Shown: one piece after another, positions 1,694-8,744 of the stretch
How the letters are laid out: each line of letters starts with the position of its first letter
Numbering within the stretch: position 1 is the first letter of the stretch
Assembly (NCBI GenBank): GCA_044892525.1
Contig: CM097885.1
Coordinates: forward strand, 13,330,001-13,394,000
DNA from: Schmidtea polychroa
Taxonomy: Eukaryota
Length of the DNA: 64,000 bases
Reading direction: 5' to 3'
Translations under genes and position numbers: made by a program
Notes under the pieces: model-generated
Databases searched by the model: none
Told to the model about the DNA's origin: nothing
The model's input: only the letters and a program-made list of their open reading frames with translations

Positions 1694-2461
1694 TGTTCAA
1701 TCGCGAATTCATAATAATCATAATAATCACACATAATCATTTTATTTTCATATACATGTTTATATCTACATCGAGCTGCTTCCATTTGTGCACGACATAC
1801 TTGAGATCGATAATCAGGGATCATAGCAGTCATAACACCTCCAGTACTTTCAGTAATATTAAACAATCTCGTAGCTGAACTCTTCTCAATCATTTTATTT
1901 GGAACCTGTCTTTGTGTAGCTACACATAAATTTGATCTCATATTATTCCTTTCTGAACACAAAACAATATCGATTCGGCCATTTTGATCTTGAGCACATT
2001 TCAACAAATTTGTTTGATCCATATTCAATTCACCAGGTACAGATTGAACTAATTGTCGGTCTCGAGATAATGTGATTACAGAGAATCCATTATCCAGAAC
2101 TTTAAGAGATTTGCTAGATCTGATAACATCGTCTTTACAAATAGTTTCTATTTCCATTTTGCTGCGGGTTCTATTCAACCTTGCCATTAAATCATCGAGA
2201 TCCATCAATTCCCCGTTATATTTAGATTCATAATTTGTAACTTTGTTTCTTTCCATAAATTCCAACCAAAATCGAAGAGAACTCCTTCAACAAACTTCAA
2301 TTCAACCTTAAATCCATTCGAAATCGATAAATCTAAAAACTCAAAATTACCACTAAATAACCACAAATTCAAATACCTCTTGCTCGCGTCTGTGTGTGCA
2401 CACAGCCAAAAACAAAGAAAAGAAAAGCGCACACAGACGCGAAACAACTAATAATTCACCA
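1694..2461 (-). repeat. 3' LTR (768 bp)
   Basis: Copy of 5515-6282, preceded on the - strand by the polypurine tract. AATAAA on the - strand at 1746-1741. The track ORF 1654-2265 is this LTR's copy of the captured coding fragments. Confidence 0.95.
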
Positions 2462-2472
2462 TCCTCCCCCTT
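2462..2472 (-). promoter_or_regulatory. Polypurine tract
   Basis: The - strand reads AAGGGGGAGGA immediately before the TG of the 3' LTR. Confidence 0.9.
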
Positions 2473-2548
2473 GACACCTTAGTGTCAATCTCAAATCCCC
2501 ATCAGCTTCTCCTTCTTCTTTTATACTCAAACATACTTTGAAGATACA

Positions 2549-5600: not shown

Positions 5601-6086
5601 TTCCATTTGTGCACGACATACTTGAGATCGATAATCAGGGATCATAGCAGTCATAACACCTCCAGTACTTTCAGTAATATTAAACAATCTCGTAGCTGAA
5701 CTCTTCTCAATCATTTTATTTGGAACCTGTCTTTGTGTAGCTACACATAAATTTGATCTCATATTATTCCTTTCTGAACACAAAACAATATCGATTCGGC
5801 CATTTTGATCTTGAGCACATTTCAACAAATTTGTTTGATCCATATTCAATTCACCAGGTACAGATTGAACTAATTGTCGGTCTCGAGATAATGTGATTAC
5901 AGAGAATCCATTATCCAGAACTTTAAGAGATTTGCTAGATCTGATAACATCGTCTTTACAAATAGTTTCTATTTCCATTTTGCTGCGGGTTCTATTCAAC
6001 CTTGCCATTAAATCATCGAGATCCATCAATTCCCCGTTATATTTAGATTCATAATTTGTAACTTTGTTACTTTCCATAAATTCCAA
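2646..6086 (-). CDS. Chimeric ORF (1146 codons): SNF8-like fragment, PSMA6-like fragment, PBS/AT-rich linker, ubiquitin, BEL/Pao Gag, charged C-terminal tail
   Basis: Uninterrupted frame from inside the 5' LTR to TAA at 2648-2646. The track start is TTG; the first ATG is at 6077. A downstream ATG at 5171 lies 10 codons before the ubiquitin domain. Which start is used cannot be told from sequence. Confidence 0.8.
3630..4544 (-). CDS. gag: BEL/Pao Gag: DUF1759-like capsid region (4017-4544) and three zinc knuckles (3630-3827)
   Basis: [18 protein letters not shown]...[20 protein letters not shown]...[14 protein letters not shown]. Knuckles [27 protein letters not shown] and [14 protein letters not shown], the triple arrangement typical of BEL/Pao. 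Confidence 0.9.
4914..5141 (-). CDS. Ubiquitin domain (76 aa, ORF aa 316-391) fused in frame upstream of Gag
   Basis: [76 protein letters not shown]. 53/76 identical to canonical ubiquitin by hand count, with no indels. Ends in LRLCGG. Confidence 0.95.
5497..5514 (-). promoter_or_regulatory. Primer-binding site complementary to the 3' end of initiator tRNA-Met
   Basis: The - strand reads TGGTAGCAGAGCGTGGTT directly after the 5' LTR. The + strand AACCACGCTCTGCTACCA fits the animal tRNA-iMet 3' end pattern (...AACCnnnCTCTGCTA-CCA). Confidence 0.85.
5565..5747 (-). pseudogene. PSMA6: Captured fragment of 20S proteasome subunit alpha type-6 (alpha1) inside the 5' LTR (second copy 1744-1926)
   Basis: ORF aa ~114-174 [57 protein letters not shown] aligns without gaps to recalled PSMA6 [57 protein letters not shown] (about 31/57 identical by hand count). 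Confidence 0.85.
5790..6053 (-). pseudogene. SNF8: Captured fragment of ESCRT-II subunit SNF8/Vps22/EAP30 inside the 5' LTR (second copy 1969-2232)
   Basis: ORF aa ~12-99 [12 protein letters not shown]...[21 protein letters not shown]...[15 protein letters not shown] aligns by eye with recalled human SNF8 RNGGLITLEEL...QDDLIRAIKKLKALGTGFGII...YLIQSVPAELNMDHT. Both ends of the protein are missing. Confidence 0.85.
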
Positions 6087-8744
6087 CCAAAATCGAAGAG
6101 AACTCCTTCAACAAACTTCAATTCAACCTTAAATCCATTCGAAATCGATAAATCTAAAAACTCAAAATTACCACTAAATAACCACAAATTCAAATACCTC
6201 TTGCTCGCGTCTGTGTGTGCACACAGCCAAAAACAAAGAAAAGAAAAGCGCACACAGACGCGAAACAACTAATAATTCACCATTGAGCGCTTCTATTAAA
6301 ATGTGTTTAAATTAATCGAAAAATAGAATGGTTTGGGAAATTCAGGGGGGCAAGTGCCCCCACCCCTTGCGGACGCCCATGTTAGTGTGCTGCAAAAAAC
6401 TTGTTGTAACTTTATGATTTCATAAGCTTATATAAAAACTTAAATTTTCTCAGTTTTTAAATTTTGATCATTAAAAAATATAGTTTTGTCATTCGTAGCA
6501 ATTGAAAAGTTTGGCTTTCCATTTTTAATGAACTGTTATCCAATTAGTTAAGTATGCTAAAAGTAAGAAACACAAGAAATAGATTTCAACAAAATTATAA
6601 TATTCGTTCAAATCTATTATCTTTTATTTGCAATTCTTTCTGATTTTATTGGTAAAAATTTATGTAAAAATTAAAGATCCTTTTTAAATATTTCATATTT
6701 GTTTAAATTTTAATATTTTGAGGTACCAATTCAAACTCAGTTATATTTTCAATTTAGAGTGATCACGGTATTGTAATTATTATAATGTAATATTGTAATT
6801 ATTACAAGGGAATGTTGCTAATAGTGAAATAAAAACCCATTCGGTTCACTGTTACGTAGTACTCTGTCGATATAACAATGAAACTAAAAATATTTGCGTT
6901 TTCTTTATTTTCAAAACATTGTTGACAAACTAATGGTCATTTTCACTATTGTCAAGTAGGCCACATGTTTTGACAAATTTGCTTAAACTAATTTGAAATT
7001 TTATAAGAAGTACTAAACTGTAGTAACTAAAGTGTAGTAATAAAAAGAAATTGAAACAAAACATATTTGCTTCGTTTACCAAATTTGGAGTTAGAATCTA
7101 TTTGAAATACAAAATTATTGTTGATTGCAAACATGACATACAAACATTTTTTATAATANNNNNNNNNNNNNNNNNNNNNNNNNNNNNNNNNNNNNNNNNN
7201 NNNNNNNNNNNNNNNNNNNNNNNNNNNNNNNNNNNNNNNNNNNNNNNNNNNNNNNNNNNNNNNNNNNNNNNNNNNNNNNNNNNNNNNNNNNNNNNNNNNN
7301 NNNNNNNNNNNNNNNNNNNNNNNNNNNNNNNNNNNNNNNNNNNNNNNNNNNNNNNNNNNNNNNNNAAATTTATAAAAAATATAGCATTTATTGACATATT
7401 TGTTCAAAATAAAATTTTCATTTTATATCTTAATTAATTTTATTACTTTTACAATTAACCGTTTTTAATTTATTATTTAAACATTTGATAATTTCTTTTG
7501 AAAAATTATTGAAAATAATATATTATACATAATAAATATCATCTTAATACTGAAAATCATTCCCAACTATCCCTTGTAAAGAATATAATTCACATCTGAA
7601 ATTTACTATTAGTAAAAAATATTTTGTTGCATTTATATTGAAATGTAACTTTTTTAATTATTAAAGCATTTGACAAGTAAAATATTTCGTATTTGATCCA
7701 AAATTTAACTTTCAAAATAAAATCATACTTTTTAAAGTGCCTGTCAATCACACAAAAATGACCAACCAAAACCAATAGCTTTTAATAACCGGTTTGAACA
7801 ATTTATTTTTGTTCAAGGAAAACTTCAGATGTCAGTTGCACTAAATTATCAAATTTTTTTGATTTTTGCACTTTTAATAATGTTAGGTTTCTATTTTTAT
7901 AATTGAGTTTTGACTTGTATGAAATCGTTTTAATAAATAATTGAGTAGTTTCTTTTTAAAGCGGCATAAGTGACCAATTGCAAAAAATGAGTTAAAAGCG
8001 GTTTTTATCTTTAAATATCTTGCAATTTCTTTGAAAATCGTCACTATTAAATAATTATTATTTGAATAGCACATATTTTTGTAATTCTAAGAAAATTTAA
8101 CTTAATTTTCGCAAAAAGTGACTCATGTCACATTTATTAAAAATTTGACTATCAGTAAAGATATCGATGTTTTTTATATCTTTACTTATTCATTGTCAAT
8201 TTTTAAAAAAATACAATGTCAATTGAAACGAAGTCAGAGGTGAAAATCGAAAGAAGTTCTTATAATATCATGCCACATTGAAAATAAAGGATCATTTTCA
8301 TACGTTTAATTTACTATTAATCTTATTATACTGGTCCACAAACTAATTGGGACTATGGTTATATATGATCATAATGATATATATTGATGTGCCAATATCA
8401 TAAAAATGTAAATAATTTAAATAAATAAATAAAATATTATAAAAAGCTTAAAATATTTGTTTATATAATATAATAAAATACATTGACTCAAATAATTTAA
8501 ATAGTTAATTACACAAATTAGGTGGAAAAAGTTAATATTTAACATGTTTTTAAGTATAAATAATTTTATAAATTGTTTTTTAAAATAAGAACACTACGAA
8601 TTTATGAAACCCTCTCAACAATATTCATTGAAAAATTGCATAACTCATTATCCTAAATAAGGTCTTCAATAATGAAAAATAACTTGTAACCGAATATGTT
8701 AATGTTCTGGAAATAAAATTTCTAATGAAAATGCATCTAATAAA

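What the first reader, a model, noticed from the sequence alone, without database searches (positions are those of the whole stretch)
1694..6282. LTR retroelement whose single ORF fuses ESCRT-II, proteasome and ubiquitin modules to Gag
Seen: a complete LTR element (TG...CA, TSD TTGAG, PBS, PPT) with one 1146-codon frame ordered SNF8-like, PSMA6-like, ubiquitin, BEL/Pao Gag, and no recognisable intact pol. Established: ubiquitin, ESCRT and the proteasome are the host machinery retroviral Gag uses for release and turnover, and an experimental ubiquitin-Gag fusion can substitute for a late domain. Inference: three separate acquisitions from the ubiquitin/ESCRT/proteasome system, all in the Gag frame, suggest selection, for example for membrane sorting or release of capsids, control of Gag stability, or decoy activity. 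I know of no described element with this architecture, but I could not search.
Basis: partly seen in the sequence, partly recalled or inferred. Interest (0 to 1): 0.92.

Follow-up and report, generated by a model that had tools for sequence, protein, structure and literature searches.

The report
Ubiquitin-headed Gag retrotransposon with gene-fragment LTRs
This is a young, pol-less BEL/Pao-type LTR retrotransposon from a previously undescribed lineage whose Gag is headed by a captured ubiquitin, while its SNF8 and proteasome pieces are partial host-gene fragments inside the LTRs and look like passengers, not working modules.

Summary
A 4,589-bp LTR element lies on the minus strand at 1694-6282. 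It has 768-bp LTRs with one mismatch, TG..CA ends, TSD TTGAG, a PBS and a PPT. One 1146-codon frame gives Pfam hits to EAP30, Proteasome, ubiquitin and DUF1759, and there is no pol.

The SNF8 piece (about 85 of 250 residues) and the PSMA6 piece (about 63 of 246) are therefore LTR sequence, present in both LTRs. Each is a partial fold. Across three related metagenome contigs their differences look neutral.

The robust feature is ubiquitin fused directly to Gag. Five other divergent DUF1759 Gags (29-46% identical) carry ubiquitin at the same position. One of them heads a Gag-protease-RT polyprotein. The C-terminal Gly-Gly is kept in 5 of 6.

One relative carries an HSP90 fragment upstream instead, so the "ESCRT/proteasome theme" is probably coincidence. 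The frame upstream of ubiquitin is open far beyond chance, and in one relative it can only start inside the LTR.

Best model: translation starts upstream, and host deubiquitinases cut after Gly-Gly, freeing Gag from whatever precedes it. I found no published description. Verdict: new variant of a known kind.

The parts
1689..1693 (.). Target-site duplication TTGAG (left)
   Evidence: Identical 5-mer flanks both LTRs
1694..2461 (-). 3' LTR (768 bp, TG..CA). Carries a second copy of the SNF8-like (1933-2241) and PSMA6-like (1738-1926) fragments
   Evidence: Alignment of the two repeats shows 1 mismatch in 768
2462..2472 (-). Polypurine tract abutting the 3' LTR
   Evidence: Read directly from the sequence
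2549..2675 (-). Tandem 42-nt (21-nt sub-period) repeats spanning the end of the long ORF
2646..6086 (-). Single long open frame, 1146 codons with no stop or frameshift. First ATG at 6077. In-frame ATGs also at 5465, 5360 and 5171
2649..3596 (-). C-terminal 'tail' of the ORF (residues 831-1146). It has no recognisable domain and sits where protease/pol begins in relatives
   Evidence: No Pfam hit. Open far beyond chance. 88-91% identical copy P0126/L007. Alignment with L006
3597..4913 (-). Gag: N-terminal helical region, DUF1759 capsid-like core (4095-4517) and two Cys-His knuckles (second at 3687-3728)
   Evidence: Pfam. 9,671 HMMER relatives, the annotated ones being BEL/Pao polyproteins. AF2 model with best PDB matches to retrotransposon-derived capsids, at weak E-values
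4914..5138 (-). Ubiquitin domain (residues 317-391), 67% identical to canonical ubiquitin. It ends in Gly-Gly directly before Gag
   Evidence: Pfam 80 bits, PDB alignments, identity table
5172..5496 (-). Leader between the PBS and the ATG just before ubiquitin. AT-rich but open in the Gag frame
   Evidence: PBS plus leader (element 769-1111) has 0 stops against 9.0 expected; 1 of 5000 shuffles is open
5497..5514 (-). Primer-binding site (starts TGG), read through by the ORF
   Evidence: The same 12-14 nt is present next to an LTR end in relative L004 and in relative L009
5515..6282 (-). 5' LTR (768 bp). The long ORF opens inside it
5559..5747 (-). PSMA6-like fragment (about 63 aa, matching residues 49-111 of the 246-aa subunit), inside the 5' LTR
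   Evidence: Pfam 23.7 bits; PDB best hits are all alpha type-6
5754..6062 (-). SNF8/EAP30-like fragment (about 85 aa, matching residues 108-195 of about 250), inside the 5' LTR
   Evidence: Pfam 36.6 bits, PDB SNF8, tblastn with an insect SNF8
6283..6287 (.). Target-site duplication TTGAG (right)

Best explanation
What it is. This is a recently inserted, non-autonomous (Gag-only) LTR retrotransposon. It belongs to a BEL/Pao-type lineage in which a captured host ubiquitin has become a fixed N-terminal module of Gag, or of Gag-Pol in autonomous members.

How it likely works.
- Translation in this lineage starts upstream of ubiquitin, in the leader or already inside the 5' LTR, and reads through the PBS.
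- The ubiquitin, with its conserved C-terminal Gly-Gly, is cut off by ordinary host deubiquitinases, as happens with natural ubiquitin-ribosomal-protein fusions.
- Gag is therefore released with a defined N-terminus, whatever was translated upstream.
- This makes the upstream region tolerant of junk as long as the frame stays open. That would explain why in-frame fragments of host mRNAs collect there: SNF8 plus PSMA6 here, HSP90 in a relative.
- The SNF8 and PSMA6 pieces are passengers in the LTR, not working ESCRT or proteasome modules. I put the chance that they are translated at all at about 40%.

Shown: the element's anatomy; the LTR location and partial nature of the fragments; recurrence of ubiquitin-Gag with Gly-Gly; open upstream frames beyond chance.

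Inferred: cleavage by deubiquitinases; the start site of translation; passenger status.
For: Anatomy:
- LTRs, TSD, PBS and PPT are all present.
- ORF residues 1-190 lie within the LTR.

The fragments are partial:
- The EAP30 hit covers profile positions 103-199 of 219, and the Proteasome hit 17-78 of 189.
- The matches correspond to SNF8 residues 114-195 of 258 and PSMA6 residues 49-111 of 246.

The junction is real: the same SNF8-PSMA6 junction occurs in independent contigs L001 and L003.

Differences look neutral: 2 synonymous against 11 non-synonymous changes.

Ubiquitin-Gag recurs:
- Ubiquitin sits directly before a homologous Gag in P0127, P0128, P0166, P0224 and P0246.
- P0127 is collinear with full BEL/Pao polyproteins.
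- Gly-Gly is kept in 5 of 6, followed by N, G or S, while Lys63, His68, Val70 and Arg74 vary.
- The same PBS occurs in the window, L004 and L009.

Upstream frames are open:
- Window leader: open in 1 of 5000 shuffles.
- L004: the frame runs from an ATG inside the LTR through the PBS in the same codon phase as here. No in-frame ATG lies between the PBS and the HSP90 fragment, yet that stretch is open (p about 0.002).
- L005: 106 codons upstream of ubiquitin are open.

Other points:
- An HSP90 fragment sits upstream of ubiquitin in L004.
- Ten non-ubiquitin relatives with long N-termini show no host domains.
Against: - There are no RNA or protein data, so the transcription start, poly(A) site, start codon and cleavage are all unobserved.
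- TATA-like and AATAAA motifs near the LTR end fit a short R/U5. That would put SNF8 and PSMA6 in untranslated U3.
- Two ubiquitin-bearing relatives (L006, L009) have in-frame stops shortly upstream of ubiquitin and no ATG in between. Upstream initiation is therefore not universal, or those copies are decayed, or splicing is involved.
- pN/pS near 1 between genomic copies is also what post-insertion decay gives, so it cannot exclude selection in the active lineage.
- Only six ubiquitin-Gag sequences are known, most from short low-coverage metagenome contigs of unknown hosts.
- One of them (P0128) has lost Gly-Gly.
Confidence: 0.6

Rival explanations
1. The SNF8, PSMA6 and ubiquitin pieces are three selected functional modules, translated as one fusion with Gag. 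They would steer capsids into ESCRT-dependent sorting or release, tune Gag turnover, or act as decoys for ESCRT-II or the proteasome.
For: - All pieces are in one open frame of 1146 codons, with an ATG three codons after the frame opens.
- Two independent in-frame junctions have roughly a 1-in-9 chance.
- The only indel inside the LTR-borne ORF in L003 is a multiple of three, whereas indels upstream of the ATG are not.
- The ORF is intact in L003.
Against: - The pieces are partial folds.
- Nonsynonymous changes dominate between copies, and the PSMA6 part shows 7 non-synonymous and 0 synonymous.
- A relative has HSP90 instead.
- The pieces sit in the LTR, where U3 commonly tolerates foreign inserts.
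- An intact Gly-Gly predicts that anything upstream is separated from Gag.
- BEL/Pao elements without env have no known need for budding (established knowledge).
Confidence: 0.1
2. Ubiquitin is not cleaved. It works as a permanent ubiquitin-like domain on Gag or Gag-Pol, for instance docking to proteasome or ubiquitin receptors as in UBL-UBA shuttle proteins and Ddi1, or mimicking mono-ubiquitinated Gag.
For: - The beta-grasp core is well conserved (Pfam 29-97 bits in all six).
- Leu8 is kept, position 44 stays hydrophobic in 5 of 6, and Lys48 is kept in 5 of 6.
- P0128 lacks Gly-Gly yet keeps the domain.
Against: - Gly-Gly followed by a small residue is kept in 5 of 6 although the rest of the C-terminal tail and the Ile44-His68-Val70 surface drift.
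- A linear ubiquitin-X junction with Gly-Gly is normally cut by deubiquitinases (established knowledge of ubiquitin precursor processing).
Confidence: 0.15
3. Only the ubiquitin-Gag part is expressed, from the ATG 11 codons before ubiquitin (5171). The SNF8 and PSMA6 pieces are untranslated U3 inserts, and the continuity of the frame through the LTR end is coincidence.
For: - A TATA-like motif and AATAAA lie in the last 70 nt of the LTR.
- The stretch from the LTR tail to the first post-LTR ATG is open in 5% of shuffles, which is not significant.
- The short pre-ubiquitin peptide resembles that of P0224.
Against: - The leader between the PBS and that ATG is open far beyond chance.
- It contains in-frame ATGs and several out-of-frame ATGs, which a scanning ribosome would meet first.
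- L004 needs a start inside the LTR.
Confidence: 0.15

Closest known systems
BEL/Pao (Belpaoviridae) LTR retrotransposons
   Same: It has a DUF1759 Gag with Cys-His knuckles, LTRs with a 5-bp TSD, a PBS and a PPT. Its closest annotated relatives carry DUF1758, RVT_1, Peptidase_A17, integrase and DUF5641.
   Different: This copy has no pol at all. Gag is headed by ubiquitin. The ORF opens inside the LTR. The LTR contains host coding fragments.
Cytopathogenic pestiviruses with host ubiquitin-coding insertions, and cellular ubiquitin fusion genes (ubiquitin-eL40, ubiquitin-eS31, polyubiquitin)
   Same: A host ubiquitin ending in Gly-Gly sits in frame directly before a protein that must be released. 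Processing would be done by host ubiquitin C-terminal hydrolases (established knowledge). Ubiquitin fusion proteins were the top PDB hits.
   Different: Here the carrier is a retrotransposon Gag or Gag-Pol. The ubiquitin has diverged to 49-79% identity with canonical ubiquitin, which implies long residence. Cleavage was not shown here.
Ty1/copia-type elements whose gag starts in the 5' LTR, and MLV glyco-Gag (upstream start in the leader)
   Same: A coding frame begins upstream of the usual gag start and runs through the PBS or leader (established knowledge).
   Different: Here the upstream part is up to 316 codons long and includes host-gene fragments. It is followed by a ubiquitin that could remove it.
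Host-sequence capture by retroelements (maize Bs1 and other plant LTR elements with gene fragments; Gag-onc fusions of acutely transforming retroviruses; the MMTV sag ORF in U3)
   Same: Pieces of host mRNAs are carried within the element, some in frame with Gag. A coding frame lying within an LTR has a precedent (established knowledge).
   Different: Two unrelated host fragments are joined in frame inside the LTR itself, and the same lineage carries a different fragment (HSP90) elsewhere.
Ddi1/DDI2 (ubiquitin-like domain plus retropepsin-like domain)
   Same: An N-terminal ubiquitin-fold domain is combined with retroelement-type domains.
   Different: The Ddi1 ubiquitin-like domain is not a cleavable Gly-Gly ubiquitin. 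No homology beyond the fold was tested here.

Membership tests
LTR retrotransposon (structural definition) | Two long direct terminal repeats with TG..CA ends | tested here: met
   768 bp each, 99.87% identical
LTR retrotransposon (structural definition) | Target-site duplication | tested here: met
   TTGAG on both sides
LTR retrotransposon (structural definition) | PBS next to the 5' LTR and PPT next to the 3' LTR | tested here: met
   An 18-nt stretch starting TGG at 5497-5514 and a purine run at 2462-2472. Which tRNA primes was not tested, since no tRNA gene was found in the window or in loci L002, L004 and L009
BEL/Pao (Belpaoviridae) | Gag of the DUF1759 type with Cys-His knuckles | tested here: met
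   PF03564 at 47.9 bits against a cut-off of 25.4; knuckles present; relatives
BEL/Pao (Belpaoviridae) | Pol with protease, RT/RNase H (Peptidase_A17 region) and integrase that groups with BEL/Pao | tested here: not met
   No pol domain in any frame of the long ORF or the tail. The ubiquitin-bearing relative P0127 does continue into protease and pre-RT, collinear with BEL/Pao polyproteins. This copy is therefore a pol-less derivative of that kind, not an autonomous member
Ubiquitin (true ubiquitin, not merely ubiquitin-like) | Ubiquitin fold and family match | tested here: met
   PF00240 at 80.4 bits; aligns end to end with solved ubiquitins
Ubiquitin (true ubiquitin, not merely ubiquitin-like) | C-terminal Leu-Arg-Gly-Gly tail | tested here: met
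   It ends in Arg-Leu-Cys-Gly-Gly. Gly-Gly is kept and Arg74 is replaced
Ubiquitin (true ubiquitin, not merely ubiquitin-like) | Near-invariant sequence, including Lys63 and the Ile44/Val70 patch | tested here: not met
   67% identity to a canonical unit; Lys63, Val70 and Arg74 are changed and Ile44 is Val
SNF8/EAP30 (ESCRT-II) | Complete EAP30 domain (helical N-terminus plus two winged helices) | tested here: not met
   Only profile positions 103-199 of 219 and SNF8 residues 108-195 are present. No further homology in any frame of the LTR
Proteasome alpha subunit (PSMA6) | Complete Ntn-hydrolase-type alpha-subunit fold | tested here: not met
   Only profile positions 17-78 of 189 and PSMA6 residues 49-111 of 246 are present. 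The score is 23.7 bits against a cut-off of 22.4
Retroviral-type capsid fold | Two-lobed all-helical capsid domain | tested here: inconclusive
   AF2 model has mean pLDDT 70.8. The best PDB matches are the PNMA2 capsid (probability 1.00, TM 0.55 on the target, E 0.08), Arc and copia capsids, but none reaches E<=0.001

The most novel reading that the evidence does not exclude
A whole lineage of BEL/Pao retrotransposons has turned a captured host ubiquitin into a host-processed 'release peptide' at the head of Gag or Gag-Pol. This lets translation begin inside the LTR and run through the PBS. It also turns the upstream region into a nursery where in-frame host exon fragments are carried, expressed and possibly tested by selection. 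In this family, that would mean a translated SNF8-PSMA6-ubiquitin product released alongside Gag that interferes with ESCRT-II or the proteasome.
Probability: 0.12. Interest if true: 0.85.

Novelty: new variant of a known kind. Interest (0 to 1): 0.62.

Why it matters
- Ubiquitin-Gag would be a natural, evolutionarily retained case of a retroelement borrowing the host's ubiquitin-precursor processing to mature its structural protein. Until now this is known mainly from pestivirus recombinants and from cellular fusion genes.
- It gives a concrete reason why coding frames can start in an LTR and cross the PBS.
- It gives a concrete reason why host mRNA fragments pile up in frame upstream of Gag. 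That bears on how retroelements transduce and shuffle host exons.
- It corrects an attractive but probably wrong reading, a themed ESCRT/proteasome toolkit.
- The hypothesis can be tested directly with transcript-end mapping and native proteomics.

Tried and rejected
- Whole-ORF word search: swamped by polyubiquitins, with no full-length relative found.
- Word search with Gag plus tail: one weak hit only. The exhaustive HMMER search was needed.
- Exact look-up of the window protein: not on record.
- Host identification failed:
  - no tRNA or Rfam family in the window;
  - other window ORFs have no Pfam hits apart from a weak hAT dimerisation match;
  - cluster look-ups gave no species names apart from a jellyfish polyprotein at 35% identity;
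  - ENA accession prefixes were not found in papers.
With 4 sequences it gave one relative without ubiquitin.
- Test for mRNA origin of the SNF8 piece against an intron-bearing SNF8 gene (L002): only one exon matched, so it was uninformative.
- A GT...AG-bounded 200-nt AT-rich stretch in the leader (5275-5474) was considered as an intron. It would break the frame, and no upstream frame bridges it, so it was left as a note.
- The bacterial promoter/terminator scan is irrelevant for a eukaryote.
- Assembly artefact is rejected: the SNF8-PSMA6 junction and the LTR end recur in independent samples.
- Dead relic is rejected for this copy: LTRs are 99.87% identical and 1146 codons carry no stop.
- Literature searches for ubiquitin with DUF1759, BEL-Pao or retrotransposon Gag found no description.

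
Full report
**1. What is there**

The element lies on the minus strand, window 1694-6282 (4,589 bp).
- Two 768-bp direct repeats, 1694-2461 and 5515-6282, differ at one position.
- They begin TG and end CA, and are flanked by TTGAG on both sides.
- In element orientation the 5' LTR is 5515-6282.
- An 18-nt stretch starting TGG abuts it (5497-5514), and a purine run abuts the 3' LTR (2462-2472).
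- GC content is 36-42%, against about 24% in the surrounding DNA.
- LTR identity of 99.87% marks a young insertion.

**2. The reading frame**

One frame is open for 1146 codons, 6086 down to 2646. The first ATG is three codons in, at 6077.

Pfam results:

| Family | ORF residues | E-value | Note |
|---|---|---|---|
| EAP30 | 13-111 | 5e-9 | |
| Proteasome | 114-173 | 4e-5 | 23.7 bits, cut-off 22.4 |
| ubiquitin | 318-388 | 8e-23 | |
| DUF1759 | 524-664 | 2e-12 | |
| CCHC knuckle | 786-802 | 0.069 | 13.7 bits, below the cut-off of 20.8 |

- Solved structures name SNF8 and, specifically, proteasome subunit alpha type-6.
- The ubiquitin aligns end to end with solved ubiquitins.
- No protease, RT, RNase H or integrase is detectable. 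Pol is absent as a whole. The frame that remains has no stop and no frameshift.
- The last 316 residues (the "tail") match no family. They occupy the place where a ubiquitin-bearing relative continues into protease.

**3.

- Residues 1-190 of the ORF are LTR sequence. The SNF8-like piece (5754-6062) and the PSMA6-like piece (5559-5747) therefore lie upstream of the PBS. They are repeated in the 3' LTR (1933-2241 and 1738-1926).
- They are fragments. The SNF8 piece covers about 85 residues (residues 108-195 of about 250). The PSMA6 piece covers about 63 residues (49-111 of 246). Neither amounts to a complete fold.
- The chimera is real. Contigs from independent ENA assemblies carry the same SNF8-PSMA6 junction.
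  - L003 is 92.7% identical and ends at the same LTR terminus before unrelated flank, so it is a solo or 3' LTR.
  - L001 is 95.8% identical over element 109-716. It then continues further into PSMA6 homology instead of the LTR end, with one in-frame stop.
  - L007 is a deletion derivative that joins the LTR end and PBS to the tail, out of frame.
- Between the window LTR and L001 there are 2 synonymous and 11 non-synonymous differences (pN/pS about 1.4). In the PSMA6 part the counts are 0 and 7.
- The tail compared with L007 gives 4 synonymous and 20 non-synonymous differences (ratio 1.2).
- Caveat: differences between genomic copies largely reflect decay after insertion. These ratios show no constraint, but they do not prove its absence in the active lineage.

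**4. The conserved feature is ubiquitin-Gag**

An exhaustive HMMER search with Gag plus tail found 9,671 relatives, and those checked are DUF1759/BEL-Pao proteins. Among the best 150 representatives, five carry ubiquitin directly before the homologous Gag N-terminus.

| Protein | Source | Note |
|---|---|---|
| P0127 | L006, same ENA accession series as the copies of this element | 36% identical Gag; continues collinearly into the protease and pre-RT part of full BEL/Pao polyproteins, so ubiquitin also heads autonomous-type members |
| P0128 | UniParc entry | ubiquitin degenerate |
| P0166 | L004 | carries the HSP90 fragment |
| P0224 | L009, JGI sample 3300013315 | |
| P0246 | L005, JGI sample 3300013315 | |

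- The window, L004 and L009 share the same PBS.
- The six ubiquitins are 49-79% identical to a canonical unit and 40-67% identical to each other.
- Conservation at key positions:

| Position | Conservation |
|---|---|
| Gly76 | 6 of 6 |
| Gly75 | 5 of 6 |
| Leu8 | 5 of 6 |
| Lys48 | 5 of 6 |
| Lys63 | 3 of 6 |
| His68 | 3 of 6 |
| Arg74 | 2 of 6 |
| Val70 | 1 of 6 |

- The residue after Gly-Gly is N, G or S.
- Same position, same PBS and shared departures from the canonical sequence favour one old capture, but independent captures are not excluded.
- An AF2 model of the Gag (mean pLDDT 70.8) has retrotransposon-derived capsids (PNMA2, Arc, copia) among its best PDB matches. The E-values are weak.

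**5. The region upstream of ubiquitin**

- In the window, the 343 nt from the PBS to the ATG before ubiquitin have no stop in the Gag frame. The other frames have 8 and 13. Shuffles give a mean of 9.0, and 1 of 5000 is open.
- L004:
  - The frame opens at an ATG inside the LTR and passes the LTR end and PBS in the same codon phase as here.
  - It crosses a 66-residue HSP90 fragment and enters ubiquitin.
  - No in-frame ATG lies between the PBS and the HSP90 fragment, yet that stretch is open (p about 0.002). Translation there must begin in the LTR.
- L005 has 106 open codons before ubiquitin.
- L006 and L009 have in-frame stops shortly upstream of ubiquitin and no ATG after them. The pattern is therefore not universal, or those copies are decayed.
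- Ten relatives without ubiquitin but with long N-termini show no host domains.

**6. Mechanism proposed**

- A linear ubiquitin ending in Gly-Gly followed by a small residue is the normal substrate of host deubiquitinases. This is established for polyubiquitin and ubiquitin-ribosomal-protein precursors, and for pestivirus recombinants with ubiquitin inserts.
- If that holds here, Gag is released with a fixed N-terminus and anything translated upstream leaves with the ubiquitin.
- This one idea accounts for several findings:
  - selective retention of Gly-Gly while ubiquitin's interaction surface drifts;
  - open but otherwise unconstrained upstream frames that cross the PBS;
  - different host mRNA fragments upstream in different members.
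- Cleavage, the start codon and the transcript ends are inferred, not shown.
- The LTR has TATA-like motifs at element positions 103 and 698, and AATAAA at 563 and 716.
  - A start near position 130 would put SNF8 and PSMA6 in the translated leader.
  - A start near position 725 would put them in U3.
  - I estimate about 40% for translation.

**7.

- The "three acquisitions from one pathway" argument does not stand. The fragments are partial, lie in the LTR and show no sign of constraint, and HSP90 occupies the same role elsewhere.

**8. Novelty**

- I found no description of ubiquitin fused to a DUF1759 or BEL/Pao Gag in the open-access library.
- Repbase, Dfam and GyDB could not be searched.
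- One such protein already sits unannotated in UniParc.
- I rate it a new variant of a known kind.

**9. Limits**

- The host is unidentified. It is an AT-rich genome, and related contigs come from host-associated or environmental metagenomes.
- Copy number is unknown.
- Relatives are short, low-coverage contigs.

- Neither was entered in a tool or used for a conclusion. The primer tRNA is therefore left unnamed.
- In my working I also located the in-frame stops of relatives L001, L006 and L009. Their places are not given here.

Noticed in passing
window 59645-60652 (+), also 56161-56493 (+): A 335-aa ORF with a weak hAT C-terminal dimerisation match (E 0.016). It is probably a remnant of a hAT-type DNA transposon. 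The rest of the window has no ORF with a Pfam hit.
   Followed up: partly
window 2549-2675: Tandem 42-nt repeats (21-nt sub-period, 2.7-5.6 copies) straddle the stop of the long ORF, between the tail and the PPT.
   Followed up: no
window 6205-6220 and 6248-6263 (and the same in the 3' LTR): A 16-nt inverted repeat (94% complementary, 27-nt spacer) lies near the 5' end of the LTR, upstream of the LTR-borne ORF. It could be a regulatory hairpin.
   Followed up: no
window 5275-5474 (-): A very AT-rich 200-nt stretch of the leader is bounded by GT...AG with a pyrimidine run before the AG, so it looks like an intron. Removing it would break the long frame, and no upstream frame bridges it. It also contains an 18-nt tandem repeat and a 61-nt internal duplication.
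   Followed up: partly
L007 (ENA ERZ2272493), 1-712: An internally deleted derivative of the same family. The LTR end and PBS are joined directly to the tail region (93% identical), with the two parts out of frame.
   Followed up: partly
L001 (ENA ERZ2272692), 1-826: This copy of the SNF8-PSMA6 chimera extends about 20 codons further into PSMA6 homology than the LTR does, and has different sequence on both sides. It could be an older or longer LTR variant, or the source of the capture.
   Followed up: partly
P0168 (ENA, 1016 aa): A related DUF1759 Gag is followed in one predicted protein by CCCH zinc fingers and a CFAP58 coiled-coil segment. This may be another Gag-host fusion or a gene-call artefact.
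   Followed up: no
L002 (ENA ERZ25069859, 450-kb contig): An intron-bearing SNF8 gene of an unidentified eukaryote. Its last exon is 47% identical to the LTR-borne fragment.
   Followed up: partly
window 1166-1209 / 8719-8762 and 8151-8255 / 8759-8887: Short AT-rich direct repeats (77-84% identical) lie on both sides of the element and in tandem about 610-630 bp apart. They may be a small interspersed repeat of the host.
   Followed up: no
window, nine runs of N (e.g. 7159-7365, 63174-63890): Gaps or masked stretches totalling 2,359 bases. None lies inside the element.
   Followed up: no
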